64,000 nt of DNA from Botryllus schlosseri (Eukaryota): contig CM119378.1 of assembly GCA_051294905.1 (NCBI GenBank), forward strand, positions 11,408,001 to 11,472,000. Direction: 5' to 3'. Positions 4,901 to 56,600 of this stretch are shown here, one piece after another. A model generated the notes under the pieces. That model saw only the letters and a list, made by a program, of their open reading frames with translations. It was not told the DNA's origin and made no database searches. How positions within the stretch are numbered: position 1 is the first letter of the stretch; every line of letters begins with the position of its first letter. The position numbers and the translations under genes are program-made.

Positions 4901-7900
4901 CCCGAATACATTAATACCTAACAAGCTCCAAAGAGACGGTTTGGAGTGCAGAACCTCATGATGGATTTGAATAATATATTGATATTTATTTAAGCACCAT
5001 ATATCACAATGATATGCTGTGAAACATTTATCTTTGAATTTATAGAATAACGATGCAACGCTTTCACAATAAAAATACCAGTAGTTATTCCTACATTTGT
5101 AATGCCGAATTCCCTTGTGATAAGCAACAGAATACCATTCCGCAGCATCTATCCACCTTAGATAGCATTATCTTGCAAACCCCAATAATGAAATGTCTGA
5201 AGAGCTGGTAAAATACTTAAACCAAACCAAGTCGCCCGAATCAAAACATTTACATTATCCTCACATGCCATTTATTACAAGTGGACACAAGATCAACCAC
5301 AAATCGACATTTGTGATCACTAATTTTGAATATATTAAATCTTATCGGAATCTGAATTGGTGCTACACACACATAAAAGAAAAGCTACCGTTTCATGACC
5401 TAGTATTTAGTGTTTTGATCAAGAATATCAACAGCACGGATACACAGCATTGCGTATCTTCACATATGTCTTTTATAGTTTCAAAAAACATCCCACACAA
5501 TATCCTCTCAGTTGAAGGCATCACAGAAAGGCAAAATATAAATTTAGTATCACGAATCTGTGGACCTAAAAGAAGCAATTTTCCAAAAATAAGTACAGAA
5601 TACATGGGTTTACCAATGCATGACGGTAAGTCGTACTGAAATAACTCAGTTTCTGGAAAAGGCACTCCGCAAAAATGTAGCAAGTGCAATAAACATCGAA
5701 GATTTCAAAGAACTATTCGTCAGCCAATGACAAAAGTGCGCAAGTATTCGCCGAAAAAGATTCTGATACTACAAATCCGTAACCAAGACGGTCATATTGC
5801 GAAAAGTATCAAACCGGGCTGCAAAATCCTTACCTGTGAAATGACTCAACATCGTCCAAATTATTCCTCAATAAGTCGACCGCATGATCGAGGATGGGGC
5901 TTACGAACTTGAAGCATTCCTGGTAAATATGAGTAAAAAGATCAGGTTGATACTCTCTCACAAACTGTTTCCACGTATTACCATCAAAATCGCAGCACAC
6001 TATAAATATATAGCCTAGTCTGGAAATTTTACTTAAGTATAGAGATGACCACTTTTAATATTTTCAGTTAGCATTTTTGTCATTATTGTTGCTCGTCTGT
6101 ATGAGTTGAAATTTATATATTAAAAGAATTATGCCTATTGACATATCCGCTGAACACTGATAATCCAAAACAGAATTACTCTTAGTTCCAGGCGAATATT
6201 AGCCCTGGACTGGAAACAATCCTTGGCTATAATTTAACAGAAATGGATATATCTATTATACCACTGTGCATCACCATACAATGGATATATTCCAAGAGGA
6301 AATTATCCCGATAGCACATCAGCAACGAGAAAAGGAAACATGATCCTATTGACTCACTTCAGCAACTGGCTTACTCCCAGGAAGATTCAATATAAAACAC
6401 CTCCCACGTGTGCCGCATTTCATTCTAAAACATAAGTAGTCCATTCAGTAAATCATAACTTTTCTACCGATCAATATCTGATTGCATTTTTCGGCCGACA
6501 TTTAAATCTAGAAAATTTAACAAGAATTACAGATGAAACAGCGATATGAGCTGTACCAAAGAAAGTCTAGAAAATAACTTACACTGTGGTGAGTTAGATT
6601 AATATCTAAAGAATGTTACGGGATGTTGAAATGAATCTCAAACATCATTTCCTAAAACAGCTAAAGGTATAACAAACCATTATCTAGTTCCGCCATATTG
6701 CTGATAAGAAAATCTGGCTTGGACGTGCCACTTCTAATCAGTGCCACCGTGAAAGGAGTTTCGGTCATCACAGGATTTGACTTGGAATTTTTGGACATGA
6801 TACGTAATGAATTCTGCATCTGTTTTTAAATTGAAAATTTCAAATCGGCTCATCTCTGGATAGCATCGAAGATTGCATATAGCTTGCCTGGATAACATTG
6901 AAAACTTGGTCTTGGAGAGCGACGCTGCTATAATCCCAGTCGTGACTGCGCTCAGCTCGCGCTCAATTACTTGTGCGGTGGCGTCGGGCGTTACATCACG
7001 TGGCGCTATGCCAGTACCGCCTGTCGTCAAAATCAAATTGCATCCTTCTTCATCGACCCAATCAATCAGGGTATCCTGTGTGAGCAAAAATCATTTTTAA
7101 AAACGGTCAAAAATTCAATGTGTAAAGGGCTTGATGAGAGTTACGAATTTCATTTTCATAAATTACCATTCTATCCTTGTACCATAAGGATACCGTTCTA
7201 GGGGTCCGCCAATAGCCTACTCAAATTTCCGAATTTTCGCCCCAATCTGTCCGATGAAGAGATTGAAACCTCGCCACGAAATTAATTTTCTCTACTGATA
7301 TACGTAACTACTATTCCAAAATAACTTCAAGATGAGATGCTGAATAGAAATGACTATGCCGGGCGTTATATGTTCATTAAATACTATGTTTTTCAATTTT
7401 GGTTCCATATATGTTGCGATCATACCCAAAGGTCGTCGGAAGTATTGCGCGTTAATATTACATTCACCAGCACCTATCTTTGCATAAATATTTTCGGCAC
7501 TCGTTCATATCGAATTGAAGACGGGGTTTATCAAGACAATAAATATACAGCTGCAGAGTTCGCTTCGAAACAAGATGTGTCCACCCAATATCTACATATC
7601 GTATGATGTTATCATCACGAAAAGTCATTTTGTGGCTGTTTTCCACAAACCTACAATTAATATTTGCACAAGACAGATGACAGTTGCAAGATAATTGGGC
7701 TAATTTTGAGCGAAAACTTGCGGGGTGGGGGGGGGGTCCGCGAGAGTTCAAGAGGAGTCCGCAAAGACAAAAAAGTTGAGAACCACTGTCTTAGAGACAT
7801 CACAATTTCGGTTGTTACTAGTAACTGTACATGTCTGTAGGCCTACCCATTCAACGGCGCACAGCGAAATTACTTTCATTTCTCAGGAAGTTTGAGATTA

Positions 7901-19642: not shown

Positions 19643-20557
19643 TTGAAAACTTCGAAAAAGTAGCGGTACTTTGTTACTGACTACCTGTGCTGGCACCTCA
19701 AGTTTGCAAAGCTCTGCAAAAATACCTACTTTTTTCGATAATTCGATCAATTCATTATTACGATGCTGTGTGACACCATATAATTATATGATGTTGTTCA
19801 TCAACCAGAGTGGTGGTCTAAGTATTCAGTGATATTGTTCCAGCACAAGTAGAGGTAAAACATAACTATTCTGTTCTGCTTAGTCACAAGTAGAAAAACT
19901 GATTTTCTAAAGATCCTGTAGGCCTACTATTTGAAATGAATGCAGAATATGTGAGGTATGAAAATGATTGAATTTGAGTAGTTTGAGTGAGTAGATTGGA
20001 TCAAGGTATCTCAGATTTATCTGAGTTACTTGCTTGATAAATTGTAAATATGTTACAAATCAAAACAAACACTACCCCTTACTTGACAGAATCCAAAATA
20101 GAAATTGACTGTAGACTTGTCTCAAAATAGTTCAATTAGATGTGGAAGTAGTCTGAAAGAATCACCACTTCGGTAAGTACTGCAAGTAGGCAAAAATGTT
20201 CTGAAAGAGTAGAAGGACTTAGTTTATAATCACATCTGAAAATAGGCGGTGGCTGAACTGTTGTAAGGCAGGTATTTTCTACCTTCCAACCACCGTAGCA
20301 GTATAGCTAATCTACGAAATTTCATAATACATCATCCAGTTTTATTCAACGGGATGCATTTCTCACACTATCAATATACTCGCTGCAATAAATCTTCATT
20401 CGGAAATTTGACTCAATAGTGCGTCATAATTTGATGTCTTGCGAATTGGTGATCAGTTACTCTAATTTATTTTATCTATTTGACCAGAGATTAATACAGC
20501 AATCTTAAAAAAACCGAGTACAAAAGAGTTCCTTTTTATGCTTGCTTCAACCTCGAG

Positions 20558-23500
20558 GAAATGAGAAGTTGATGGAGGGTGAAGTGCTTGAATGTTTGTG
20601 CATTCTTGTAGCGAAGAGCTACGACAATTTATCTGATTGGTTGACCTTACTGACAGAGACCCGGGTTATCCAGAGAGGTCTGTATAATTTCATTTAAGAA
20701 TGGTATCAATATACTATCCATTCAACTTCTACATCTGTCATCGCACAGAGCATGGGTTTTGGATCGTCCAAACAGTATTTCTCATTCGCTGACGATTGCC
20801 CCTGAAGAGTGTCAACTCGAAAAGCTTCGGGTTTCAATATATTTATACAAATATAATATTACTTACCGTAATTGTATATTGTCCAAACAGTGTGACCACC
20901 TGTCCTGATCATCAAACCTGGAACAACCATTATTGTAATGAGTTACTTGCGTCATTGACACATGAACAAAACCATAGCTATGCATCTATTATATGAAGTT
21001 ACATTGAATGCGGCTAAAATGAAATAAGTCATTCTCAGACTTTCTCTCAGATTATGAAGAGATTTATATTTTAGCTTGAGGTGAAATATCTATAATAATG
21101 CGTGATGGTGCAAGCGGGTTATGTGCAGTGGTACCGTCCTAGTATGATCATCTGTTTCAGTGGTTCTCTTTTTTAGACACGCCCCACTTTATGATAGTGA
21201 AAATTTAACGCCCCCCTGATCGTCATATCACAAAATGCAACCAGAATGCCAGCAATCCAAACGAATAGTTTGATGGCACGGAAGGTTATGACTGTTGATG
21301 AGATGATTCTCAAATATGAAAATAGGACTATATACATGGCAATAACTATGAATTGGAGGCGGCACGATGACTGCAGCTGACCGCAGAACACTGACCGCAG
21401 CCTCTCGCCCCCTTCAGATGCTTTCATGTCCCCCAAGGTTGGCGTGCCACCCATTTTGAGAACCACTGGTACATTTTGAATACTAGGATATACTTGTTCA
21501 TGTACTCAAATCAGCCAATGATGCAAATGACATTATATTTATAGCAAAGAAAAAGAGCTTCATAAAGGATGTACAGAAGGATGAAGTTGATAAGGTGCTG
21601 CAGGAGACATGCAATGCTGTTTTGAAGGTGTCATTGGAAGATCAATTTTCCATATTTGAGGATGAAGGTTGGAGTATCTGATGAATTTATCACTGTATTA
21701 TATCAGTTATTGTTGATTTGATTGAAGCTATTCATTTACCTGGTTACCTGCCATGACAATAATTAGTGACTGTGCCAAATGTGATACTGTTTCAACTTAT
21801 GCGATGGTATGATATCTTACAAAGGGAGATGAGACCAGAACCTTTGATGACATGTCTGTTTCAAAATTTGATTGTAATTCAGTGGATCTTCTAATTAAAT
21901 TGTTATGAGTGGCTGCGCGTGCCAAGGACCGAAAACGCCCTCCTTCACCCCCCAAAAAACATTGGTAGTGGTCTGTTCAAACTTATGGGGCTTTGCCCCT
22001 AGACCCCCATTATATGATGGACCAGTTGCCTTACAATGCAAAGTAATCGTATAGGCCTATTTTTATTCAAGTTCAGTTTGGCTTCACAGCGCAGAATTTT
22101 CCAAATTCGTGAATGAAATTTGTCAATAATATTGGTATTATTGTATATTACCATCAATTTTGATCCTATTTTCCCTGAAAAATTTCTTTGTTCCACGTTG
22201 CTAATTTGTGACCTAATTGTAGCTATAGTCAAAAGATTTTGGAAACATTAAAATCAAGAAATCTGGCGACAATAAGTCATGCGAAGCGCGAATAAAAAAA
22301 TCCAGTTGTTTAAATATTTCAAAATACTCCATACATTATGTTAATTCACAAAATAATTTTGGGCCCCCTTCGATCTGTTACTATCTGCGACTGCTATGGC
22401 ACTGCGTGTACCTCCTATTGGAAAACTGTTTGAACTGCTGTTGACATGGATAAAAAAATAAAGGGCAGCCAGAAATTCTGAGTAGCCTAACCTTCGACTT
22501 TGGGAAGCTGACGACTCACCTAGCCCTTGTCTTGACTTGTTTACCAGTGTCTCGAATCAGGGCTTAAATACAGATCTTATAAATTTGGACAATGCAGTTT
22601 TGAAGGCAATGGTCCATATAAGTCCAGAATATCCAAGTGAATATGCATTGCAAATTTATATTTTCATGGCTAGACCATGCATCAGGATATGCATAATTGT
22701 GCAATGTACATAAACCCTTGCGAATAAGTATATTTATATCAGATGCCAATTGTCATAAAAATGATTTCTTCCAATGCCAATTAGACATTCACATTTTATT
22801 ATATCGGGAATTTCCAATATGGTATCACTACTTTTAAGATTACTAATATACGAAGTTTTCTAATATACCACTGCAATATTTTACCCTGATGAATTTTCAG
22901 ATTTCCCAGGAAGCAAAAAGCTTGTGGATATTATCTTGAAGTTGCTACAAGATGGCCATATAAATTGGACTATCTCGTATCTGGTGAAGTCATGGGACAA
23001 ATTAGAGGAATCAGATAAAATTCAATCAGCAGCTGCAGTCTACTGTGCTGGGTAAGTATGATCAAATAGTTATCACATTCAGTAGACTCAAAACTCCAAG
23101 CCGTTTTGTTTTGTCTCGCTTCTACCTTTTCGTTTTAGCATATTTTGAAATGATAAATATATATTTTGAAATGATAAATATACTGGATTAAGCTGAGTGG
23201 GCCTTCAGGGGTTCCCAACATTTTTATGGTCGCAACCCTAAATTTCGATTCGAAAATGTTCCACAACCTCACCTGAATTTGGCGTGCTGATTACTAAAGA
23301 AATGGTCAGCACCTTTGCTAGGGCTGTTCAGAATTGACCGACTTTAAAAAAGTCGTAGTTTTCAGTCTGTTTCCCATGCCTTAAAAATATATATTCCAGC
23401 TACTTTTTTCTGTAAGTCATTCCTTGCATCTGTTTGCTACTGTGGATGTTGAGCTAGAACAGGGACGGGCAACATACGATCCTCGACGTGATTTTGAGTG

Positions 23501-26500
23501 CCCCGCAGACAGTTTTCGTTCTTAAATGATAATATGGCCGGCGGTCACAGTCTTCAGCAATTCTCCACTACTTGCTTACTACGTCAAATTATAGTGACTG
23601 TAGGTTCTTCTTTTATTCGGACACAGATAATAGATCTTTGTTTTCTTTGTGTCCGACATGCAGCCAGAATTCAAAAACCCTGTACACAACTTTGATCAAC
23701 CACAGATATCTCATTGACTTCAAGAGGTATTGGAGTACATTACGTTAATAAATTCATTGAATACTGCATTGGTATCTATGCTTCAAACTTCGAAAATTTA
23801 CATTGAATACGATTAATCCTTGTGGGCTATTGGTGAATAAATTCGTGTGTAATTTATCGATTCAGTAATCCAGCCCGCCAAGTACTTCATTTTACCATAT
23901 CTGGCCCGCCAACTGGAGAAGATGACCGCCCCTGAGCTAGGAGAATAATGGCTGAAATGTGGGGATTCGCCAATGATTTGAGTGTTGCGATTTTACCTAG
24001 CTTGGTAAATGCAATAAATACCAGGGTCCGTATAGCTGTTATGGTTTGGGGGGATACAAACCCTCACTATAGAAATTTTTTTTGAGTTAAGGACATCACT
24101 TTTATATTGTACACTGCTTGAGATATCCTCCAAGCTACCTAAAACAGTAAGACTGAACATCATTTTGTATGATTCGCTACGCAAAAAAATATACTGGTAA
24201 CTAAATGCACCATCCACTCGCACAGACACATCATAGGCCTTTATATCTAATTATTTAATGAAACGTATCAACATAACGGGGAAATGGATAACGAAACGAA
24301 ACAACATAATGAAGAAATGAATTAATTTGACAGAAATCCAACACCAATCAGGTGGATGAAAAGGTTGATTTTTCGAAATTTCAAAATCTTTGCTGGTGAT
24401 CTTCTGCGGCTTGTAAGAGACTGGCTTGCTGTTTGTGTCATCTGTTATGTACGTAGCGTGGTCGCTCTGCTGAACCGTTAATTACTTTATCTTTATTCAT
24501 GAATTCCCGAGCACTCATGAAATGCAAATCACTATGCACTATGCCGTTCTGATACTGAACCACGATTCCATTCCAGTCAAATGAACAATCAAAAACCCGA
24601 GCCTATAATAGTAGAACACCGTTGGTCAAGTATTCCAGTTTCAGAATTGCATCGTTATCCGCATTTCATGAGTGCTCGGGAATTCGTGAATAAATGTAAT
24701 AGAGGGAATAATGGTAAAGTAGGTAACGATGCAGCTGAAAGGAAAGGACATAGTTTATTTTTGTCCTTGATGATAAAATTAAATCTCGACCACGCTGCGT
24801 AGATACCAGACAGGAAACAGCAAGCCTGTCTCTCACAAGCCGCGGAAGATCACTAGCAAAGATTTTAGGATTCCGAAAAATCAACCCATTTATCCACATG
24901 ATCAGTCGCTGTATGAGTGGATTCTACATTTACAGTAGGCCTATTTTTCCGGGATAATCGTGCCGAATGATGATTAGTCTTAGGATTGCTAAGGCAGTGT
25001 GCAATATGACAATGATGTCCTGAACATAAAGTAATATCTACAGTGAGGGTTTGTATCACTCCAAACCATAGCAGCTGCATATACCCTGGTATTTATTGTA
25101 TTTACTAGGCTAGGTTTAAAGTAGGGCGGGGCATGGACTGGAGCGGGATTGGATATCCAGCCGGATTTTGTCATTTTCGGCGGGAGTCGGTTTGCAGCCG
25201 GATCAGTACTTTTTCTGATGCGGCCGGAGTCGCATCAGAGCTGGATCAGTACTTTTATACCAAGAATAGGACAGCCTTTTACCCTCTTTCACCCTGGAAT
25301 TAATAGTTAAAGTGAAATGTTCATGGAGATGAACTGCGGGCTGAGTCCAAGTTGGCGGGCCTAGTGCGATCCCTAGGTTGGGAACCCCTGTACCAAAGGA
25401 TTCAACTGTGGAAGATTTTATGCGAGGTACTTTCTCATTTGAAAATTAGAGTTATGATAGAGACAGCTTTAACAGCAGAACTACTTCCATTTCTTGTTTT
25501 CTAGCATTGACACATTCACAGCAAAATGGAATGACAAATCCTTTTTGTAAGGCATTATATAGATCGTATTATTAATACTGCATTCATTCATTTTACAGTC
25601 TACCTGAACAAAATTGGATGCCAGACTTCATTCATCACATGCTTCATTCAAACGTTATTTTACAAGAAAAATTTATTAAAGAGGCGAAAGAAATTTTGGT
25701 AATTGCATATATGAATACTGAATAATAATGCAGTGGCATTATTTTGCCAGTGGTATTATTTGGGATTTCTACTGCCATGAAATTTAGTAGCAAGACAATC
25801 ACATCTTTTTTGTGATCAACATTTGATATGGACTCGTTAGGAAACTGAGTTTATCAAGTTGTGTAAGAAATCAGGAATATCAATACATTAACATATAAAC
25901 ATCCATTCAAGGACCCTGGGTTACTCACAAATCATTGGTCGCATGGTCAGTCGATCTTAGATTAGCTCTCATGATATTGGCATTGTCCACTCTGTCTATA
26001 TCCATGTTAATTTATACCCACAAAATATACAGCTTCTTGCATCAAAGAGTGTTTGATACATTTTCTGGAATATAATGTGATTGCAATTCATCTACAGCAG
26101 TGGTTCTCAAACTTTTTTAGACACACCCCCCTTTTTGATAGTGAAAAATTTCGCGCCCCCCTTATCGTGATATCACAAAATATTGAAGAGAGAAACCAGA
26201 ATGCTAGCAATGCCAACGGATAGTTTGATGGCATTGAAGGTTATGGCTATTGATGAGAGGATTCTCGAATATGAAATTCGGACAATAGACAGAGTAAATA
26301 CCATGAGCTGGAGGTAAATCGCGCAAGGCGCGAAAAAGTTTACAGTTAACTGCGGCTTCGCGTCACCCTTCAGATGCTTTCACGCCCCCAATTTGAGAAC
26401 TACTGATCTACGGGAAACGAAGAATAATGGTGCTTGAAGGCCATGAGATATATATTGAAATAAATAACAAAATAGTAATCAGACTACTTGCTTAATCTAA

Positions 26501-26604
26501 TCATGAAGCGAATAATTTTGTTCAGGAAACTGATGGAAAATCACAAACAGATCCAAATGATGACCAAAGTACCATGGAAGTGGACCAACAAAACTCGGAC
26601 AATG
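20558..26604 (+). CDS. Duplicated 5-exon module, copy 1 (191 codons)
   Basis: Exons 20558-20677, 21545-21667, 22901-23051, 25599-25698 and 26526-26604; phases 1-1, 1-1, 1-2, 2-0, 0-1; open throughout. Confidence 0.85.
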
Positions 26605-29600
26605 GTAGGCTTTCTGGAGCAATTTGTATATTGTTAAGTGTCACTTATTGAAGAGATACTAGTGTGAGCATAAAGGTAGCTGGATCGATTTTTGACTCGC
26701 CAAATTTCCCTGTTCCCTGTTCTGCAACATGCCTCTTCTGTGGCTGCCCATTTTTGTTACTTCTGTAGACTATTTCTCATTGAGTGAGCATGCCTCTTTT
26801 TAACTCATTCATCTATTTGTTACTGTACATGTTTATAAGCCAAGGTAGGAGTTTTATTTATTGAGTACGAAAAAGTCACTTTTTCTTCTTGCTTCAACCT
26901 CAAGGCAACGAGAAGTTGATGGAGGGTGATGTACGGGAATCCTTATGCATTCTTGTCGCGAAGAGCTACGACAATTTATCTGATTGGTTGACCTTCCTGA
27001 CAGAGACCCGGGTTATCAAGAAAGGTTTGTACGATTTCATTTCTGATTGACTTCAATATCCTATCCTTTAAACATCTACATCTGCCATAGCATGAAGAAT
27101 GTGTTTTGCATCGTCTAAATAGTGTGACCACCTACTCTGATCACCAAACTTGAAACCACTATCATGATAATGAGTCATTGTTATTCATGGACTTTCTCTC
27201 AGATTATGAATAAATTCATATTTTTTGTGTTAAGGTGGGCTGAAACATCTATATAAAAGTGGTCTGTGCTCTGTATAAGCATGATCTAATGATAGTCTGT
27301 TTTGGAAAATAGGATATACCTGTTTATGATTCAACCAGCCTTTTATTTATAGCAAAGAAAAAGAGCTTCATGGCGGATCTGCAGAATAATGAAGTAGAAA
27401 AGGTGTTGCAGGAGACATGTAATGTCATTTTGAAGGAGTCATTGGAAAATCAAATATCCGTATTTATTGATGAAGGTAAATTAGATATATTGACATGGAT
27501 TGGCCCACGGGTTTATCTCATTGCGACTTCATAAATGTGCTTGTACATGATGAAACTGAATTCTGCGTTACAATTCTGCACATTAGTTTGACAAACTTGT
27601 CTCTCAAAAACACTGGGGATCGCAAAATGCCACAGGGTAATTCATTAGCACCGGTTTTGTATTGTGTCTTCACCTTGGAGGTTGGTAAATTGAATTGAGA
27701 TGTCATAGCTCATAGGATTACATGAAAATGTTAGCAGGATCGAGTTGGGAACGTTTCATAGTATCGGCAAATCTGAACTAATCACGAATGCCATTGCTAC
27801 CATAGAGCAGACTCTCTGGTTCCAGAAAACATGCAATCTAGTTAGCGAGTTTATTATAAGCCGAACCAACCATGGAGAGTATTGGACACAGTGATAGAAT
27901 TCTTTAAACTATGCCGCGGACCCCAAGAGGTCTGTTAACTACAGTTTCAGAATCCCTGATCTAGCTGGTTGGCCAACATCTCAGTAAACTAATAAGGTAC
28001 TGCTGACTGCCAAGATTTATGTGTTATTGCAGGTCTTTATGATCTATATTTGTAAATTAGTTTAACGGATGACGCATAACTATGAGTATGATTTGGAACA
28101 GAGGTTTTCACTCTCTCTCCAATACCTGGACAGCCAGCTGCCATTGCACAGTTGCATATAATTTTTAAATTGTCTGATCTAGCCTTGAAAAAAATTTCAA
28201 TAATGAATTGCAAATTTATGTAATTTGCTTGACTAGAGCATGCAGCAGGATATGCATCGCATATTTGTACGTAAATTCATGTCATAATACACTTTTATCA
28301 TCAATATCATCATTTATTATAATTCTCATAATAGATGCATATCCTCATGAAAAGTATTTCATCCAATGCCAATTAGACATTATCAAATCCAATATGACTA
28401 TATCGAAGAAATCACAATATTGAATCACTCATTTTACGAAATAATAAGTACCATAATTTCCCGAATATAGTAGGCACCTTTAAAATGGTGTGTAAAATCT
28501 GGAAAAAAGCCTGTCCCCATGTATAATACGCACCCTGCATTCTCAGTACATGAATAGTTATATTTTAGTATTCGATGCCATTCTGTTTTGCGATATCGCT
28601 GTTGAAGATTGCTCAGGCCAACGATATTGTCGTGCGCACCAGGCCTGTTGGAGATACGACTGTAGTGTTTAGGCCAGTGATTAAATCTTGCGCACATGTC
28701 GTGTTGTATATGTGATTGTTCAGGCCTGTCGTTGGTGTGATTTCAAGTTATATTTCGAGAGATTTTTTTCAAGGCTTGCATAATACGCACCCCCGATTTT
28801 AGGACAAAAAATCGGGAAAATTTTGCGCAATATACATGGAAAATTATGGTAAATAGATGGTTTGTGGTACAGAACTTTCAATAAAGCATCTATTGTAGTA
28901 AAATATTTATTGAACTTGAAGAATTTTCGGGTGCCTCTTTTCAAGAGATTTAAAGAGACTTGAAAGCAAAACCAAAAATTACAATTATTTAAAAATATCT
29001 TTAGGATAGTACTGCTGGATAGTACTGCTACTGTAAGATTTCACCCTTATGAATTCTCAGATTTCTCAGGAAGCGAGAAACTTGTAGATATTATCCTGAA
29101 GTTGCTACGAGATGGTGGTCTAAGTTGGCCTATATCATATTTGATGAAGTCATGGGACAAATTAGAGGGATCGCATAAGATTCAATCTGCAGCAGCAGAC
29201 TACTGTAAAGGGTATGTATGATCAATTTGCTATTAACGTTCAGTGGAACCCTAACTTTAAAAGCTTTTAACTCCAAGTAGTTACCGCTCATTCCTAGCTT
29301 TTCAGTTTATTGCAATCATTTTTGAAATGATGAAATTATTAATAAGCTAAACTAAACCGAGTGGGCCTTTAGCAGTTCGACATAATATCGGTTGTAACTG
29401 CGGACGATTTCATTTTGGGTATTTTCTCATTTGGAAATTAGATATTTGATCAAGACATTTAGCTTCATGACAGCAGGACTAACTTCTTTCATTTTCTACC
29501 ATCCACTCACCCAATTTTAAATGAACTGACAAATGGATTTGTATACCGCATTACTTGAATCATATTGGTAATAATTTCATTCAACCATTTTACAGTCTAT

Positions 29601-32600
29601 CAGACCAAGACTGGATGCCAGACTTCATTCATCATATGCTCACTGCAGCAAACGTTATTTTACAAGAAGAGTTTATTGAAAAGGCGAAAAAAATCTTGGT
29701 AATTGCATATATGAATAAGAGCTTCTTGGAGTTACAGAATGGTATATTCATATTGAAATATACCCAAATCTTTTCGGCTGACACTCTTCAGGGGTAATCG
29801 TCAGCAACTAGTAGAGAATTGGAAAGAACATTGTATATGAACAATCGGCTTATTTCAAGATGAATATACTATTCAATTGCATATAGGAATAAATATTCAC
29901 TGGCATTGTTTTGCTACTAGTATTATCTGGGCTTTCTACTGCCATATAATTTAGTAGCAGGAGCTGGCATATCTTATTTGATATGGATTTATTTTTTGAT
30001 CAAGCTGTATCAAATGAGCAATACCAATGCATTTTTATTTGATAATCCATTCAAGGATCCAGTTTGACTGATCTACACCATGGGCACTTGAAGGCCATCA
30101 CAAATACTATTAAACAAATTATGGAATATTAATAAAACTACTTGGTTTTCCTAATGACGCAAATGCGTCTGTTCAGGAAACTGATGGAAAATCTCAAACA
30201 GATCCAACTGATGACCAAAGTGCCATGGAAGTGGACCAACAAAATTTGGACAATGGTAGGCTTTCGGAATCAATTTGCATATTGTTATGTGTCACTTGAT
30301 GGATAAATATTACTGTGCATATTGAAATCGATTGATTTTTGACTAGACGTATTCGCCTGTACCCAGTTCTGCAACATAGGGCCTACTTCTTCATTATTCA
30401 CCCAATTTTTGATGTTTCTGTAGATTATTTCTCATTGAGTAATTGAGTATACATGCCTTTTTCACATGTTTTTCTATTTGCTACTGTACTAGATCAAAGT
30501 AGAAATTAGTAATTGAGTATACATGCCTTTTTCACATGTTTTTCTATTTGCTACTGTACTAGATCAAAGTAGGAATTTGATATATTGCCTTCAAGTCATT
30601 TCAACTCCGTCCTTTCTGTTCGTTGTGATGCTATTCTCGTGGTGTCTTGAATTGATAAAAATTGAGATAGAATGATACTGATATGACTTACTGCACCAAT
30701 TGAATGCACCGCTGGACAGTGGAAGAAATTATGGGTTATACATCATTTATTATGTTTGACAAAGGGTAAACCAGGGTTCTAACCAAGTCACAAAGTTCCG
30801 AGTCACAAGTCGATCTCACTTTTATAGTTTGACTCGATTCAAGCCGAGTCATTTTCAATTCTTCACCAAGTCAAGTCCGAGTCCAAGTCACGAAGTAGAG
30901 TGTCGAGTCCGAGTCATAGTGATTTGTCTGGAATCCGAGGCCAAGTCATTGTGTTGACCGTTCAGTTCCCAGTTAATGTCATGTGAAACCCACATTTTAC
31001 AACACTGCTCGGTGATATCGAATGCTTCATATTCATAATATAGTTTGTAGTAGCATTTTCAATCACCGGTACTGATAGACGAAATAATAATAGTGTGATA
31101 TAACTTTACTATTCTTCGAAATTACTATGAAATTGCTGTCTAGGTAGACCCAGTCTCGAGTCATATGACTTGGTTCGAGTCATGCGCAATGACTCGAGTA
31201 CAAGTCGAGTCAACACACAAATTGACTCGATTCGAGTCACTTTTCACTTGTAAGAAAATGACTCGAGTCAAGTCTAGTCACCAAAAAAATCGCGACTCGC
31301 GTCATGATTTGAGTCGTTACAACCCTTGGGTAAACTACAGGATGTACAGGTGCTAAACACTGCAGTCAGTCAGTTATGAAATCCATGCAGGTACCTTAAT
31401 TTTCCATGTATAATCCGCAAAATTTACACGATTTTTTGCCCTAAAATCGGGGGGTGCGTATTATACATGGGAACAACACGCTTGAAAAAAAATCTCCCTC
31501 GATAAAAAACTTGAAATCACACCTTTCTTCATGTTTGTTTCCAATCACGCATCACTTTCAGCCATCGCGGGTAGTAATTCGTATTGAAGAGTGTGACGCG
31601 CTGCCAATTAAGGGAAGCGCGTTTCTAATTAACGAGAGCCGTGCCGAGCCGTCCCAACCTTTTTCCACCCACGTACCACTTCGAGGTTTTATGCAGTGCT
31701 CGCGTACCACCTACACAATTTACGCACGCCGTAGGCAGTCAAAAATATTTTCAATATTTATGACGTCATACCCACGTATTTGAACTATGTGAGGTGTAAT
31801 AACTAGGGCGATTTTTTACTTAAAAATCGGAGGATTTTGATGTAAAAAAAACTTGATTTTGACCAAATTTTGACTTCACGTACCCAAATTATGTGTTTTT
31901 GCACATAATGTTAATATTGTACTACTTACATTCATTTCTGGTCAGGACTGTCTGTCCTTACGAAGTAGTTTGACCTGAGAAAGCGTTTTTGACTGAAAAA
32001 CTGACAAATTTTGTCATGAAAAAACTTTATTTTACCGATATCTGGCCCAGTATTTACACCACGTAATATGGTAGAGTTAATTAAAATCTGTTGTAGTACA
32101 ACGAAACATACTTTCTTACATTCTCGGGTAGAAAGTGTCTGTCCTTACTAAGTAGCTTGCCAAGGATGGAGAAATACATTGTAACAGCAGTAGTTGTTGG
32201 CTGACAACACTGAAGCTGTACGTACACTGCTGGTGACGCAACATATTGCTCTATTCTGACAATGTTGTCATACATCACAATTTTTCATCATGCCCTTCTT
32301 GATAAAATAACCATGCAATGCCCAAGCAGTCTTGCTTCAGTTAAGATATTGCGGTACGTTGAGCATAACACCATGTCAATTGTCAACCTATTTGTTTCGT
32401 TCGACAGTTTATGATCCACGATGAGCAGACAATGGGCCGCCTACAACGGTAGGCGTATAAAGTGGGCTACAAGCTGTAAAATATCAAAACCTACGATACA
32501 AACGAAATGGAGGGGTCAAAACTTTTTTGACTTTGTAAACAATTTTGACAATTTTTTGACTTAACACTCAATTTTGTAAAGAAAAATCGTCCTAGTAATA

Positions 32601-38600: not shown

Positions 38601-41600
38601 TGCGCTGCCAATTGGCGTCTGAGCTGCACAACAGCAAGCGATCTCCTGCTGAGTTGGTTTGCCGTTCGTACACGAACGAAATTAGGTCATTGATATCTGC
38701 ACGCGCGCGTGGCAACCGCGTCAACGACAGGTCTGAATATTCGCATATACAACACGCACAACATGTAATCGCTGGCCTAAACACTACAGTCACATCTCCA
38801 ACAGGCCTGGTGCGCACAACATAATCGTTGGCCTGAGCAATCGCATCTGTAATAGGCCTCTTGCGCAAGATGTTGCTGACCTGAACTGTCGCGACGCGGG
38901 CCTCGCAGGCTTTGGTGGCTTTTTACTATCGTTTAGAAACAATTCCGTTAAGTGTATAATGATTAGCGATTGTTATGTCATGATTGTTCAACAGTGACAT
39001 CGCAAAACAGAATGTTATCGAATACTAAAACTTAACTATTCATGTACTGCGAATGCAGGATGCGTACTATACATGGGCACAAGCTTTTTCCCAGAATTTA
39101 CATGCCATTTTAAGGGTGCGTATTATACACGGGGGCGTACTATATTCGGAAAATTACGGTATGCACTATCAGCAATTGAGTTTTAATACTGACTTATTTA
39201 CTATTGTGAATGCTGAACAATCGTTTCATTATCAGATCCTCAGCATCGTTCGATACCTGTAACAGTGGGCAATGAATTCAATCATACAGAAGTAAAGACG
39301 GCTTACTCATACCAACCTGATGTAATCAAAAGAGATACCCCAGGTTTTACAGTTAACTGAGTTTAAAATTAATAACTGGATATAACCAGAATTACATTCT
39401 TTTGTTTGCATCAGTGATTGACCATCCCACCTGCCGTGATGCACTCGTGAAGAAACCCGTAAACCGTACTATTTCTGCAGGGAGCAAACAACTAGAAGGT
39501 TAGGTTTGTCTTGCTGTCCGCTTATTTGTAGTTTAAAAAATAATAATGATGTTTCATCATAGATGAGGTGTCTGCTGAGATAACACAAGTCAATACTGAT
39601 CCTACTTCATTCTGTGAAAACGATTGTGAGCCTTTCTTCTTTCTAATTCAAATTTAAATTTCTTTTAGCCTATTGAAGTACATTTTAAATAGTTTGCGGA
39701 TTCAATTTTCATCACCAATCTAGTATTCAAAATGGCCACTGATAAATTATTTAATCTTCATCTGATGTCACGAAAACAAAATGCTTCTGAAATTTTAAAT
39801 TTGAACCACCAATTACAATACTACTGATTTTCAATCCTGATTTTAGAGTTGATGAAAAGTATAATCCATTAATAATGAGGTATTGTTTGACATCACTGAA
39901 AAGTGGAACTTCATCTCAAGTCTCATAGTAGATCTCAGTACATGATTCAAATGATGGAAATGCTATGGTTTCACAGACAATACTACTGATGACGCTGACA
40001 AGAACATGCGACAGGACAATGCAGCTACATCTCAAGTGGTAAAGACAGAGTTAACTGGTACACCTAACTATTTATTGATGTTACTTGACGATATTGCAAC
40101 AATACCGTAATGCAAACACATAACAGGTAAATCAAAGTTGATTGATGTAAAAGAGACCACCAAACCGCTATCCGAATCACATACCTCATCTAAAGGTTGG
40201 TCGAACTTGTTGGAATTGATTCTACTTTGCATCAAATATAGTGAAATACAAAATAACAACTGGTACTTTGCAACTCTGCCAATTAAAGCCTGTGGAGGTT
40301 TGAAAACTGCTTTCACTACTTAAGGGGGTTTGGAACGGATGTGGATTAACTATTATTTTGAAGCAGGATTGGGATATGGTTTTTGACATCAAATTTCTGA
40401 TAATTTCCAATTTCATATGACTTTTGATTGAATTTTCGCCTTTACTAAATTTGGACATGACACAAAATGAATTCTGTGTTTGAACTTGGGTTTGAAAATA
40501 TTTCATCCACTCATGTCCAGTATCTCTGATGTAGCTACAATTACAGATTCTGAGACCTGTTTGTCTGAATTCTGGAATTAGGTTAAATATACGGCTAATC
40601 TGTTATTCAAGTTTGTTATGATATAATATTCACCAGGTGCTCCAGTTGACGAGTGTGGATATGAAGGGGAAAAAGATGCGCACCAACGAGGTTGTATCGG
40701 TCATTCCAGAAGTATAAGATAATTCCGATGACATAAACACTATAGAATAAACACTACTCACCATTACAAAATAAAACTCATGTTTGCTGATAAATTTCAG
40801 ATGAATCTGATAAAGACAAATCGAACTCCGAAACCATTGGTGCTACATCACTTGAGGTGAAAGATTGTGGAACAGGTTGGTCCCTAGCTTTTTGCTGTTC
40901 TGAATTCCAATGAAACTGTATCATATCGTGCTTCATGACGAAGCATAAGAAAACTCTGTGAACTTTCAACATAATACGTATGAAACACCCTGAAATTATA
41001 GATGATTTCTGTATTTCTATCAATCCAATGTTCAGAAAGGGATACGTGTTACACATTGGAGGTTTTGATGTTATCAATTGTTCCAAATTTCTTTTTTTTT
41101 CTAGAACACTGAAATAATGGAATTTGGGTCTGCTGTCCAGGAACGGCCTAAAATCTATTTGCTTGTCACTTCTATATGGATGCTGTTGTTTTATAAGTCT
41201 AATATGTGAGAAAAAATATTATATTATCCATTCTATGTCCCGATCCCATTTATTCTATTTGCAATATAGAAAAGAAACATCTTGTTCCTACAGTATAACT
41301 AACATTTTTTGATTTGTCTTAGAAAAAGATCCACCGCTTGGTCATGCCGATCGCACTCTCTCCGGTAATTTTTTAAAAAAAATTTCTGCCTGTGCAAATC
41401 TTCATTATGACCAATGTTTGCGAACAGGCTCCAGCTCTGGCTCGAATGAAGATGGACCATTTGTGAAATTCGGAGAATCAACTGATCTCTTAGTGAAGTA
41501 TAGGCACAACTTGGAAGTAGTAGTCAGACTGGTCTGGCCTGCTGAACCACAGTAAGTATCTTGATATACCTTTTTGTAACACTATCCATTTGATCAGAGT

Positions 41601-44600
41601 AGTGTGAGCATTCTCAATACAGTTTTTGGTATGGATTCATCAGTGGTTCTGACGGTTAAATCTTGTTCAATGTAGCTAACTGTCGACTCCGCTTAATTAC
41701 CGTAGGACACTGGTCAACCACATTATTTGGCCAAAATGGTAGTTTGCAAGATAATGTAGCTGCATTTCTGGTAACATAAATATCTACAGAATTAAGAGTT
41801 CATAAGTCAATAATAGTGGTATCTCTATAGTCATTCTGGGACAATATTTCATGACTAGGATTATTGGTACCTTCAAAGGTCATTCAAATGCGATTATGAT
41901 GTCTAGACTACTCCAGGATTGGCCTGACAAATTGCTGGAGTATATGTTTGCCAAGGAAGAAGATGATATTTCAATACTCCCCTTTGCTTCCATTTGTTTG
42001 AAAATCATGAAGCAGGCTGAGGTAGTAAATTCCATTATTAATGAGTATCTTGTTAGTCACTTTTTCTTTGAAATGAAGCCAATTCGAAGTGCATATGAAA
42101 GAAAAGGGAGTGCCAACGCGTACACCTGGCTTATGAAAAATCGCGGATTGGTGAAAAATCGCATTGAATTTTTTGCTGACTTGTGTCGATTGAAATGGCC
42201 AGAGGACAAGTAAGTCTCTATCACAATTACATGTGTCAATGCTGCAAATATGACTCCCAATCCGGCGCGTAGCCAGGGGTGGATTTTTGCCTTTTCAAAC
42301 GGAACCCTGTCTTTTTGAATCGGACATTTCAACTTCAATATTCAATCACAATTCAATATCAGTGTTGCAATTGAATAGTATATTGGTATTGAAATGAACC
42401 CGAATATTCAATTGTATATTGAAGTTCTGTACCTCCAAGAAGCTCTTTAAATATCAGTGTTGCATGCGGCCAATTAGCGAAATGCGTGTTTCCAATTAGT
42501 GAGATTTAAGGAGATGTCCCACTGATATTGTTTTACATTTTGTACACGAAATTAGGTCATTGATCGTCGCTAGCTTGATTCATCGCCTTTGCACCAAGCC
42601 TAGTTCCGCTGGCCTGAACAATCTTATCTGCAATAGGCCTGATGCACACAATACCATTGCTGGCTCACGCAATCACATCTTCAATAGGCCTGGTGCACAA
42701 TATCATCGCTGGCCTACACAATCGCATCTGCAATAGACCTGGTGTGAAAGATTATCGCTGGCCTAACTATTTGGGTCTAGTGGGCCTCGCAGGCTCTGGC
42801 TCCTATCTCTGGACAGTTACTTGTATGCTGATTACCGATTGTTATGTTATGTCATACTCGCTAGTGAGTTGCATTGCGAAACTGAATGTCCTCGAACAGA
42901 CTTCAAAGTTCATAATTGATTTCCGATTCCTCTAATACTAAAATATAACGATCGGTGATGTGTGTCAAGGCTTGAGTTATAAACGATGAAAATGGTCTGA
43001 ACCACCTGAAATTTGTGACATTATAGAACAGATTCCGTAACAGACCCGGACTTGCGAAAATCGTCGCCGAGGTTGTGTAATACGTATTGTTAAGTGTTCA
43101 TGTCACAAATTCACAGCACTTCTGGACTGGTTGGCAATCTTATCATACACGTAATTACGTCAACACGAGGAGCTTGTATATTCCTAATTTATGCATGTAA
43201 TTAACCCTAATGAATTGATACTATATCAGTAAATATCCAAACCCCCCTTTCATTTCAAACCCCCTTTATTTTAACCTCGCATTAATATGTCCTAATCATA
43301 TATGATTCCATTATTTTGGATTTATAGCCGTACTTGTGACTTCAAGATTTTATAGCAATTTTTGAATCAAGCTTATTTGCAGTTCACATGTGGCACTGGG
43401 TACATTCCTGAACAATGGTTAGTTTTGAAAATCTAGGTTCACTTTTCAAAATCCATATCTTCTATGGAATAACTCGGTAGACGTTGTTGGCTTAATAAAA
43501 AAAGTTTCGCGCAATATAGCAAGAAAAGCTGATATCTGAATCATAATCACTTCTATAAAGTGTGTGAAGATAATGCAAATTGAACAGAACAGTAAACAAA
43601 GGTTTTTTAAATGATATGAAGGTAAATTAAACCTTCTTCAGATTTGGTATGACTTTTGTTATCAAGTTTGTATCTGACTGGATTGTATCACTATGTTAAG
43701 TTTACATACGATATGTTTCATTCAAGCTGGAGTCTAGAGGGCGATATTTATTCAAAAATATTGAAGAAATCAAAGGCGGAGTCTGCAAAATTCAATGCCA
43801 TAATAGATGTATTCATGTCAGTGGAGGAAGCAGCGCAAAAGCATAGAAAAACAGTTGAAGACAGTGAGTTGTATTTTTACTGAATTTTCATTCATGATAT
43901 TAAGGCTCTTACAGTTTTTCATTTCGCATTTTTCTCGTGCCACGTGTCTTGACTGAATTTCAAGTAGCATCGCATCATGTTACTGCATTGCCATATGCGT
44001 GTTATAAATATAATTCTCCAGCTGTTTTCATTTTATGTTCTATGAATTTTTGTGGATTTGACTGAAGCTATGAGAGCCTGCTATAAATATTGATTCTTTG
44101 ATTCTCTGTAGCGCCCGCTCAGAAAGACGATAAGCCAAAAAAGACGACTAAGATTGAAAAAATAAAGGGTGAGTATCTTATCAAGCACATGTGGTTTAGG
44201 ACTGACTACTGTTTTGAAAAAATCGAACATTGCTATATTTGCAATGATAAATTCATCACTAAATACTTGACATAGATCTGCCATCACATACCAAAAATAC
44301 AATCATCATGACAGACCTACGGTACGCTAAGAGCAACTTACGACATTTGCACTCTCTCATAATTCTATCTCAGTAGTGTATACCGGCCATACTAGGTCTG
44401 CTAAGGTGATCCTTCGCATATCGCTTCACGAGCGGTGAATACTTGTAATGCAGAATTTATGGAAAAGACTTGGTGTTGGATTTGAATGGTCATGGAATTA
44501 GTTGAATACTTTTTCATTAAATTTGTGACAAACATTTTTTAAGTTTTTTTTTCCAGTTCCATATTTCTACTTGGAATCTGTTACCTGGTTGAACTTCTAT

Positions 44601-53600: not shown

Positions 53601-56600
53601 TGCAAACTGAGCCCAGCGATACATAGCAGACCCGTAAAATACTTCGGTAACAATATCATTGACCTATACACTTTGACATATTTTCGCGCCTTGCGCGGCT
53701 AGTGGCCATCGCAATGGTCCGTCAATTGAGTGTGGTCCTTTGGCCGAAAAGGTTGGCCACCCCCTGCTCTAAACTTTTCAATGTAAAGTTTGTCATTCCT
53801 TTTATATCATTCTGGCAACCAAAATTTGCATCCAGTAACAATAGTAACACAAATTCCTCCGCGGTCCTTCCGGAAAAGTCTCATTATTTGCAATGTCGGT
53901 TATTGCAGTATTTAATTGGCATGACAATGGTTTCCCACTTGGCTGCAGAGTCATCGGCCTCAATACGTTCTTATCCCTAAATGTTTGATTTCAACAATGG
54001 CAGCCAAACCTGTCGCCAACTGTGATTCGAGATCTGTTATTGATTTTATGGTTCAGATGTTAAGCACCAGCATTGAGAACTTGCGCTGATCCCAGGGTTG
54101 CAATGACTCAATTTTTTAGTGATTCCACTTGACTCGAGTCATTTTCTTTAATACAGAAAATGACATTACTCGACTTGAGTTAATTGATTTATTGACTAGA
54201 CTTGTGCTCGACTCGCACATGACTCGACCAAGTCAGATGACACGAGACCATGACGGCCAAAACAGGCGTTTCATTGTAATTTTGAAGAATAGTAAAGTTG
54301 CCACATTATTGGTAGTGGTATTTCGTTTTTCAGTACTGGTACTTAAAAATGTGGCCGATACTGTTAAAATTTATATATTATAAATGCAAGGCATTAGATA
54401 TCACCCATTCTGAGCTGTAAAAAAATTGATTGAACATGATTGGAACTCGAAACAGAGCAGGTAACACGATGACTTGGTCTGGGAATCGAGCCTTAACACT
54501 ACGACTTAAACTTGGCCCTCTGACCCCTGACTTGGAATCGGTGATGAATTGAAAATGATTCCACTTGACATGAGTCAAAACTGTAAGTGTAAAACTGACT
54601 CCGAACATTGTGACTTGGTTACACCCCTGCTGATCCTGAGTGAATTGTCTTGTGTCAAGTGCAAAATGGTGAAAAACGTTTCATTTGTCGCTTGATGGAG
54701 TCCTTGTCCAATGCAAATTACTTGGTGTTTGCTGCCTGTACTACCCTCAAATTTGATTAGGATCTATTCTGTTTAGCTATGTTTTTCGTGGCTATTTGAT
54801 ATAATTCAGGCGCTCTACCAAATTATCAATGTTTTGTTGTTTTAGGGACGAACAATTCTATCGAATTTTCCTTCCGAGGAAAGAAGAGAAATACAGATTC
54901 CAATACAAATACTGTATCTATATCCGCGGTTGGCCGCATTGGGAATATCTTCCAAGAGGAACAGAGAAAATTGTAAATCGGGTAGCTGTTGTCACCAGAG
55001 GTATTTTGTTTTGTTTTGTCACACCATTTGCATTCTCATTAACCCACAATCACTAAGATGTGATATCGTTACACAATTGGCAATGTGGGGGCAAAAGGGA
55101 CCCCATCATGTTCATTGCTCATTAATCTGCTAATTTTACTCTGGAGCTCTTAAATCACCTTTTGCATGACGGTATGCGGATGGGTGTTCATTTCTCCGAA
55201 CAACACACCAACTTGTTTGGCAAGAACAATCTGAATTTCCATGAAAAGATTACTGTTAATTTTGACCCCCTCTTAGTGTTGCAGGTTAAGTGGAATGGAA
55301 CATTGGATGAGACGCGTTCCATAGTTGACAGATTAGAACCGTCGTCCATTGTCATAGAAATAAAATATAGACATAGAACATAAACATAGAATTTTTAGGC
55401 GAGTTCACAGATGTAGCGTTACAGCATTTTGTAATATGTACAGAACACATCACATATGATCCATTGTAGTCTTTGTATTGTTTTTGCAGATCGGACCATC
55501 TTTCGTGATGTCCCAATGCTCCATATTCATGGACGCCATCCTGACGAAGTTATTAAATCCTCTGTGTATTTACATTTGCCAACACCGGCGATGTCTGCTA
55601 GTGGATCCATCAATCCTGCAGAGAAAAAAGAGATTGAGTCATGCATTGACCAATTCAAAAGAGGATGGGATACAACCGCGGACAGAAGATACCATATTGA
55701 TATATCTGATATGGTTTGTTTGCTCGATTTGCATGATTTTTTACATTTCATGGTAATTTTACATTGGACCAATACATTGTTATTGTTGTTGTTGCCCGAT
55801 TCCTAATCTGTCACCATGTAGGTCACCATACGTTCTCTTTTAAGAGGATTTGTCCTATTTTTTTGACTTTTTAAGCTTGACTCTCTTTTGGGCTGAGCCG
55901 GAAAGTTGACCTTATTTTTAGTCAACCGACCACGAAGTGGGAAAAATTTACCACTTTTCCAGGATTTTCCTTCGGTTTTGCAAGTCTGAAAATTTTGAAA
56001 AATGGTCCTTATTCATATTTCCAAAATATTGTAACCCGAAATGTAGCACCTTGCTCTCGAATGCTCTGCATATTACCACATCCCATTATTACATATAACT
56101 ACCAGTTCACTTTTTACCTGCAAGGAGAAATTACCGTCCTATTGATTTCTATGCCTCGGACACTTAAATCTTCAGAGTGGTCCCAGACACTAACCTCATT
56201 TTATAAGAGGTAGTGTAGTGCTTTAAAATAACGCTTTGACTGATCTGATACCTTGTTTGCCGGATTTACATTCCTCGAAGGTTGTTTTTTTCCTATTATG
56301 AAAAACGAAGTCTAATATTCAGAAACTAGCATCTGGCATCCAGCCATTCAACCAACCATACAGCCTGACTGTTTAGAGCAGGGGTGGGCAAACTTTTCAG
56401 TTCGCGGGCCGCATTCAACATCTGAATCCATTCGCGGGCCGCACCAAAACGCAATATTGGTATTTGATCACATAGCGAGGACAAGGAACTAATATATAGG
56501 CTTTTTAAAAAACCAAACATTGCTTTGATGATATCGTACACGCGTCAGAAACAGTGGCGAGATTTCATAGGCTGGTCGAACTCAATAACCAATGTGTTAA

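What the first reader, a model, noticed from the sequence alone, without database searches (positions are those of the whole stretch)
20510..30580. Intragenic tandem duplication of a 5-exon, ~191-aa helical module with a CARD-like signature, upstream of an RNF213-like gene
Seen: two complete copies of five exons together with their introns. Frames and splice sites are intact and the only indel is one whole codon. Amino-acid differences are 6/40, 13/40, 12/49 and 3/26 in four of the exons, while the introns carry different TE insertions. This pattern is consistent with an old duplication kept under selection. The segment GS(K/E)KLVDIILKLL.DG...W.ISYL resembles my recollection of RIG-I CARD2 ([21 protein letters not shown]), and AAxYCxGLxxQxWMPDFIHHML looks like a second such helix-W-helix unit. 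Established: RNF213 is a giant AAA+/E3 pathogen sensor, and death-fold domains relay innate immune signals. Inference: this could be an undescribed sensor with tandem death-fold-like signalling modules fused to an RNF213-like body.
Basis: partly seen in the sequence, partly recalled or inferred. Interest (0 to 1): 0.72.

Follow-up and report, generated by a model that had tools for sequence, protein, structure and literature searches.

The report
Duplicated helical head of RNF213 paralog
The ten exons are a real, selectively maintained tandem duplication of a 191-residue helical module that most likely forms the N-terminal head of one of three neighbouring sea-squirt RNF213 genes, but no sequence test shows it to be a CARD or other death-fold domain.

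Summary
There are two sets of five + strand exons, all with AG/GT borders. They are 573 and 576 nt long, and the frame stays open across the A5-B1 joint. Amino-acid identity is 77%. dS is 0.37 and dN/dS is 0.32 (95% CI 0.19-0.53).

The gene downstream is a true RNF213 homologue. Its AAA exon, 10.7 kb past the window's end, matches mouse and human RNF213 at E about 1e-174, and a RING exon follows.

The same chromosome carries three RNF213 paralogues in a row. Each has two copies of this module, and all six are intact. The pair in genes 2 and 3 is old. The pair in this window is a separate, younger duplication, or was homogenised by conversion.

In genes 2 and 3 the first module is closed by a stop two codons upstream and has no acceptor there, so it probably carries the start codon. 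The modules are therefore the protein's N-terminal head. An in-frame splice path leads from B5 into conserved downstream exons.

The CARD reading has no support from Pfam, solved-structure sequences or profile comparison. RNA reads were too few to show the transcript.

The scan has separately noted another RNF213-like gene with a CARD-like head on another chromosome of this genome (s1-240483).

The parts
20516..26828 (+). Duplication unit, copy A: five exons and their introns, swollen by repeat insertions
26863..30489 (+). Duplication unit, copy B. It starts 42 nt before exon 1 and ends about 230 nt after exon 5
20558..20677 (+). Exon A1. The first in-frame ATG is codon 5 of the module, a possible start codon
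21545..21667 (+). Exon A2. Folded alone it gives one long helix, residues 2-38, pLDDT 87
22901..23051 (+). Exon A3, the supposed CARD-like segment. Folded alone it gives three helices, pLDDT 66
25599..25698 (+). Exon A4, with the invariant W-M-x-D-x-I-H-H-M motif. It is one codon shorter than B4
26526..26604 (+). Exon A5, an acidic, polar linker that ends in phase 1
26905..27024 (+). Exon B1
   Evidence: about one RNA read
27353..27475 (+). Exon B2
   Evidence: about two RNA reads in run X10
29061..29211 (+). Exon B3
   Evidence: about five RNA reads in run X10
29596..29698 (+). Exon B4
30177..30255 (+). Exon B5. Its donor and the first ten intron bases are conserved with the last head exon of gene 2
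41323..41364 (+). Downstream exon Ca, phase 1 to 1. B5 can join it in frame. Its borders are conserved in three copies
41428..41551 (+). Downstream exon Cb, phase 1 to 2
41907..42021 (+). Downstream exon Cc, phase 2 acceptor, conserved in gene 2 in two copies
43727..43863 (+). Downstream exon conserved in gene 2 in two copies
54846..55029 (+). N-arm exon with a starch-binding-like Y-K-Y ... W-E ... N-R pattern (the pattern is my own recollection). It is 82% identical to gene 2, with mismatches mostly at third codon positions (8/2/14)

Best explanation
The ten exons encode two tandem copies of a lineage-specific module. Each copy is about 165 residues of mostly helix followed by an acidic linker of about 26 residues. 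Together they form the N-terminal head of an RNF213 paralogue in a sea-squirt genome.

Shown:
- The module is a phase 1-1 exon set, so it can be doubled or skipped without breaking the frame.
- It was duplicated in place about 0.37 synonymous changes per site ago.
- Both copies have since been kept under purifying selection.
- The two neighbouring RNF213 paralogues also carry two copies each, from an older duplication.

Inferred:
- The head is a fast-evolving, repeatedly re-duplicated surface for protein binding or self-association. It sits on flexible acidic tethers in front of the conserved AAA/RING machine.
- By analogy with the paired heads of other immune sensors, it would recruit partners or substrates rather than catalyse anything.
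- Its fold is unknown.
For: Anatomy and selection:
- Intact splice sites, open frame and dN/dS of 0.32.
- Derived substitutions are spread over both copies, 14 in A and 20 in B.

Six intact copies in three genes, and nowhere else in the genome:
- The tree gives three fully supported pairs: 1A+1B, 2A+3A and 2B+3B.
- dN/dS is 0.25-0.56 in every pair.

The gene is RNF213:
- AAA exon, E 7.7e-174 to mouse and human RNF213.
- A further exon matches human residues 1835-1923.
- RING exon.

N-terminal position:
- In genes 2 and 3 the first module has an in-frame stop two codons upstream and no AG at the homologous place.
- The first in-frame ATG is codon 5 of the module.

Continuity with the gene body:
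- B5 (phase 1) joins Ca, Cb and Cc in frame. Their borders are conserved in three copies, one of which has saturated dS.
- Exons whose mismatches fall mainly at third codon positions run from 41.3 kb to the AAA exon.

Structure:
- Helical character.
- Linker composition: 8-9 acidic residues of 29, 1-2 basic, few hydrophobic.
Against: - No transcript evidence joins the modules to each other or to the RNF213 body. In four RNA runs only a handful of reads lay on B1-B3, none lay on A4, A5, B4 or B5, and no joint was reported.
- No annotated or assembled protein containing the module was found among 1.84 billion representatives. Only three short genomic ORF fragments turned up.
- The exon chain is a heuristic with many candidates. 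It contains at least one wrong border and one junction stop.
- Phase compatibility of B5 with Ca has a one-in-three chance expectation.
- The function is inferred from position and evolutionary pattern alone.
Confidence: 0.68

Rival explanations
1. One reading: each module contains one or two death-fold (CARD-like) six-helix bundles. The protein would then be an RNF213 with tandem death-fold signalling heads, like the paired CARDs of RIG-I.
For: - The module is helical, and its two halves (about 80 and 85 residues) are each the size of a death-fold domain.
- The start of exon 3 (G-S-K-K-L-V-D-I-I-L-K-L-L ... W) looks by eye like the G-x-K-x-F ... F ... L ... P-W end of CARDs found in this genome.
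- A scan note reports another RNF213-like gene of this genome with a CARD-like head. I did not check that claim.
- Death-fold domains are often too divergent for sequence methods. My own control with a thin CARD profile missed a true CARD pair.
Against: - No Pfam hit per exon at E up to 10.
- No hit to solved-structure sequences for profiles of exons 1-4 at E up to 10, RIG-I CARDs included.
- The CARD, Death and DED models hit 6, 128 and 3 places in the genome, none in this cluster.
- hhalign probability is 0.4-1.8%, and the alignments are inconsistent with each other.
- Exon 2 folded alone is one 37-residue helix, which is unusual for a death fold.
Confidence: 0.15
2. The modules belong to a separate small gene that travels with each RNF213 paralogue, not to RNF213 itself.
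For: - No RNA joint links B5 to downstream exons.
- An 11-kb repeat-rich gap separates B5 from the next recognised exon.
- The heads of gene 1 and gene 2 differ by dS 0.8-1.1, while their bodies differ by 0.09-0.45, so head and body have different histories.
Against: - Same strand and same order in all three paralogues.
- The donor after the last head exon is conserved, together with its first ten intron bases, between genes 1 and 2.
- The splice from B5 to Ca is in frame in both genes and gives the same junction residue.
- No stop-bearing terminal exon was found.
Confidence: 0.12
3. The two copies are used as alternative cassettes, A or B, or one is skipped. This would give head variants rather than a tandem pair.
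For: - The phase 1-1 symmetry allows either set to be skipped in frame.
- The few RNA reads lay on B1-B3 only.
Against: - Only A4 and A5 of copy A were inside the stretch laid, and read depth was near zero everywhere.
- The 300-nt A5-B1 intron has intact GT, AG and a pyrimidine tract.
- In genes 2 and 3 the first copy appears to hold the start codon and the second has its own acceptor, which suggests serial use.
Confidence: 0.15

Closest known systems
Vertebrate RNF213 (mysterin), a giant dynein-like AAA+/RING E3 ligase
   Same: - The AAA exon aligns to human residues 2159-2842 at E about 1e-170.
- An upstream exon aligns to human residues 1835-1923.
- A C3HC4 RING exon follows.
   Different: - Profiles of exons 1-4 of the module find nothing in the full-length human or mouse RNF213 sequences held in the structure bank, so the head has no detectable vertebrate counterpart.
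- This genome has at least six RNF213-like loci.
Paired N-terminal CARDs of RIG-I/MDA5 and tandem DEDs of caspase-8
   Same: - Two copies of a small helical unit sit at the N-terminus of an innate-immunity type enzyme.
- A flexible linker follows.
   Different: - No sequence or profile similarity to any death-fold family.
- The unit is about 165 residues, not about 90.
- The fold was not determined.
RNF213-like gene with a CARD-like head elsewhere in this genome (scan note s1-240483)
   Same: An RNF213 paralogue of the same genome that carries an extra N-terminal head.
   Different: - It lies on another chromosome and has one head, not two.
- The module of this window occurs only in the chromosome-8 cluster.
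- I could not fetch that head to compare the two.

Membership tests
Death-fold superfamily (CARD, DD, DED, PYD) | Match to a family profile (Pfam CARD PF00619, Death PF00531, DED PF01335) | tested here: not met
   No hit per exon at E up to 10. Genome-wide scans give no match in C8 11.40-11.82 Mb. The genome scans work exon by exon, which lowers their power. PYD was not scanned genome-wide.
Death-fold superfamily (CARD, DD, DED, PYD) | Six-helix antiparallel bundle of about 85-95 residues | not testable with these tools
   The spliced module has no reference, so it was neither folded nor searched by fold. Fragments folded alone: exon 3 gives three helices and exon 2 gives one 37-residue helix.
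   The exon 3 profile finds nothing among all solved-structure sequences at E up to 10.
Death-fold superfamily (CARD, DD, DED, PYD) | Profile-profile similarity to genuine CARDs of the same genome | tested here: inconclusive
   hhalign probability is 0.4-1.8%. One positive control gave 93%, but a thinner control gave only 1.5%, so the test has little power.
RNF213 | Dynein-like AAA core with two Walker A motifs | tested here: met
   L009:689-2851 matches RNF213 at E 7.7e-174. It contains G-E-T-G-C-G-K-T and G-K-P-G-S-S-K-S. It lies 10.7 kb beyond the window's end.
RNF213 | C3HC4 RING in the E3 module | tested here: met
   L009:7969-8907 matches Pfam zf-C3HC4.
RNF213 | The module exons lie in the same transcript as the AAA/RING body | tested here: inconclusive
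   Same strand, and the same order in three paralogues. An in-frame path runs B5-Ca-Cb-Cc, and codon-periodic exons continue up to the AAA exon. No RNA joint was seen.
Selected tandem exon-set duplication | Both copies intact, in frame, with dN/dS below 1 | tested here: met
   dN/dS 0.32, CI 0.19-0.53.

The most novel reading that the evidence does not exclude
The module is a previously undescribed signalling or self-association domain, death-fold-like or wholly new. RNF213 paralogues in sea squirts would carry it in tandem at their N-terminus and keep re-duplicating and exchanging it. The ligase would then work as a modular immune sensor, with paired heads that act like the 2CARD of RIG-I.
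Probability: 0.15. Interest if true: 0.75.

Novelty: new variant of a known kind. Interest (0 to 1): 0.42.

Why it matters
RNF213 is a major cell-autonomous immune ligase. The function of its N-terminal region is unknown (my own knowledge, not checked here).

This locus shows a lineage where that end of the protein carries an extra, fast-evolving domain.
- The domain has been doubled at least twice independently.
- It is kept intact in six copies.
- It has a different history from the conserved enzyme body.

That is the pattern expected of a recognition or adaptor surface. It gives a concrete, small domain to express, fold and test for binding or self-assembly. In three full-text searches the listed titles and abstracts described no N-terminal head on invertebrate RNF213.

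Tried and rejected
- **Finding a full-length or spliced protein to fold.** A profile of exon 3 against 1.84 billion representatives found only three short genomic ORF fragments and three spurious repeats. A scan of metagenome contigs found no relative. The ESM Atlas gave no usable hit for exon 3.
- **Typing the spliced sequence.** It has no reference, so I did not type it in. AlphaFold and Foldseek on the module were left out for that reason.
- **A weak exon 3 match on chromosome 9.** It turned out to be midasin, a chance match.
- **Internal repeat within the module.** hhalign between segments found nothing.
- **A third, decayed copy.** The only trace is a weak exon-1-like stretch at 21104-21175 with a stop, E 0.013.
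- **RNA support.** Four runs were laid on 24500-30450. Almost all reads came from repeats at 24737-24772 and 29739-29884. The exons had 0-5 reads and no joint was reported.
- **Window ORFs against solved structures.** ORFs at 41.9, 54.8, 55.5 and 61.6 kb gave no RNF213 match, so the N-arm is too divergent for this test.

Full report
**1. Observation**

Direct-repeat search and self-BLAST show two collinear copies of one unit, at 20516-26828 and 26863-30489. Translated comparison picks out five + strand segments per copy that stay open in one frame.

Nucleotide alignments fix the borders:
- Copy A: A1 20558-20677, A2 21545-21667, A3 22901-23051, A4 25599-25698, A5 26526-26604.
- Copy B: B1 26905-27024, B2 27353-27475, B3 29061-29211, B4 29596-29698, B5 30177-30255.

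Every border is AG or GT. The sets add up to 573 and 576 nt, and the one indel is a whole codon in exon 4. The frame runs open through A, across the 300-nt A5-B1 intron, and through B.

The set begins and ends in phase 1. It can therefore be doubled or skipped without a frameshift.

Introns differ in length, 867/1233/2547/827 nt against 328/1585/384/478 nt. The extra DNA matches repeats found elsewhere in the window.

**2. Selection**

- Identity is 147/191. dS is 0.374, dN is 0.119, and dN/dS is 0.317 with bootstrap interval 0.19-0.53. No replicate reached 1.
- Alignable intron flanks differ by about 0.39, close to dS.
- Polarising the differences with the paralogues gives 14 changes on copy A and 20 on copy B. 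Neither copy looks abandoned.

**3. The gene it belongs to**

I fetched the 200 kb beyond the window's end.
- A 721-codon exon 10.7 kb past the end matches mouse and human RNF213 at E 7.7e-174, human residues 2159-2842. It holds two Walker A motifs.
- An exon 3.4 kb before it matches human residues 1835-1923.
- A later exon holds a C3HC4 RING.

So the downstream gene is a genuine RNF213 homologue. ORFs inside the window itself gave no RNF213 match.

**4. A cluster of three genes, each with two heads**

Exon 3 has six matches in the whole 495-Mb genome. All are on this chromosome and on this strand, in three pairs. The AAA exon likewise has three copies there, plus three more distant ones on two other chromosomes.

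I rebuilt the modules of genes 2 and 3. All are open, with lengths of 585, 588 and 585 nt, and they keep their splice sites. The fourth is only partly within reach.

The tree has three fully supported pairs: 1A+1B, 2A+3A and 2B+3B.
- In genes 2 and 3 the doubling is older than the gene duplication (dS 2A-2B is 1.15).
- The pair in this window (dS 0.37) is a second, younger doubling, or the product of conversion.
- Every pairwise dN/dS is 0.25-0.56.

The heads of gene 1 and gene 2 differ by dS 0.8-1.1. Their bodies, from about 41 kb on, differ by only 0.09-0.45. Head and body therefore have different histories.

Gene 2 also has a second doubled exon set further in, which is single in gene 1. 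The 5' part of these genes is evidently prone to exon-set duplication.

**5. Position in the protein**

In genes 2 and 3 the first module has a stop two codons before its first residue and no AG at the homologous place. The first in-frame ATG is codon 5 of the module. The second modules have acceptors, and a Lys replaces that Met. This points to the module pair being the very N-terminus.

In gene 1 both copies keep the AG and the Met. No conserved exon was found upstream, only repeats.

Downstream, three small exons have borders conserved in gene 1 and in both copies in gene 2, one of which has saturated dS: Ca 41323-41364, Cb 41428-41551 and Cc 41907-42021.
- Their phases, 1-1, 1-2 and 2-0, let B5 (phase 1) run on in frame.
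- The junction codon gives Glu in both genes.

A dynamic-programming chain of exons was built, requiring splice sites and open frames in both paralogues. It reaches the AAA exon, and many of its members show mismatches mostly at third codon positions. This chain is heuristic. It has at least one wrong border and one junction stop, and with 14,685 candidates the mere existence of a chain proves little.

**6. RNA**

Raw reads of four RNA runs were laid on 24500-30450.
- Nearly all reads came from two repeat patches.
- Run X10 gave roughly one, two and five reads on B1, B2 and B3, and none on the introns.
- There were no reads on A4, A5, B4 or B5, and no joint was reported.

This is weak evidence that copy B is transcribed and spliced at a very low level. 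It says nothing about copy A.

**7. What the module is**

Helix propensity and AlphaFold on single exons suggest about eight helices in about 165 residues. Exon 3 gives three helices at pLDDT 66. Exon 2 gives one 37-residue helix at pLDDT 87.

A 26-29-residue tail follows, rich in Asp, Glu, Ser, Thr, Asn and Gln and poor in hydrophobic residues.

Fifty-two columns are invariant in all copies. They include three Trp and the W-M-x-D-x-I-H-H-M motif.

**8. The death-fold claim**

- No Pfam family matches any exon at E up to 10.
- Profiles of exons 1-4 find nothing relevant among all solved-structure sequences at E up to 10.
- The CARD, Death and DED models match 6, 128 and 3 places in this genome, none in the cluster.
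- BLAST against two genuine CARD proteins of this genome shows nothing.
- hhalign against a five-CARD profile gives 0.4-1.8%, with alignments that disagree with each other.

The power of the last test is low, because one of my two positive controls failed. By eye, the start of exon 3 does look like the end of CARDs of this genome. I do not count that as evidence.

The decisive test, folding the spliced module, could not be run.

I put the death-fold reading at about 0.15. A scan note raises this slightly: it reports that another RNF213-like gene here has a CARD-like head (unchecked).

**9. Verdict**

The finding is a real, selected and repeatedly arising tandem head on RNF213 paralogues of a sea squirt. 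The organism's identity comes from other agents' notes. The head is built from a domain with no detectable relatives outside a few genomic fragments in other samples.

It is a new variant of a known kind of protein. The CARD label should be dropped until a fold is available.

Noticed in passing
window 806-7087, minus strand: Gephyrin-type gene. Two ORFs match MoeA_N and the molybdopterin-binding domain. The His/Gly-rich ORFs at 3.9-4.3 kb are the linker array already noted as s1-268436.
   Followed up: partly
L007 (G000:C9:15487386-15490478): The stretch lies in an open frame of 5274 codons without a stop. It matches the midasin AAA and lid domains. This looks like an intronless or nearly intronless midasin gene.
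   Followed up: partly
genome-wide, e.g. G000:C4:20656892 and 20667428: More than 100 nearly equal-scoring Death-domain ORFs of about 100 residues. Many sit in inverted pairs about 10 kb apart. This suggests a dispersed repeat unit that carries a death domain.
   Followed up: no
L014-L017 (C8:11538-11562 kb); exon sets at about 130.0/132.5/133.6 kb and 143.4/151.5/153.8 kb of my joined sequence: Gene 2 has a second, old tandem duplication of at least three downstream exons. The same set is single in gene 1, at 41.3-43.9 kb.
   Followed up: partly
G000:C8:11816329-11818605: The AAA exon of the third paralogue is matched in pieces with one in-frame TGA, although both its head modules are intact. 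It lies about 140 kb from its heads. It may be a damaged gene, or it may contain an intron.
   Followed up: no
window 24737-24772 and 29739-29884: Very high RNA read depth on short repeat patches inside introns. The reads have poly-T loose ends and show opposite-strand joints. They probably come from expressed repeat copies elsewhere.
   Followed up: no
window 30438-30577: Two copies of a 70-nt unit, 99% alike, at the end of duplication unit B.
   Followed up: no
window 21104-21175: A weak exon-1-like stretch with an internal stop inside intron 1 of copy A (E 0.013). It may be a relic or chance.
   Followed up: partly
joined sequence about 143451 (gene 2, exon Cb): The donor reads AG|GCAAGT where gene 1 and the older copy have GT. 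This is a likely GC-AG intron.
   Followed up: no
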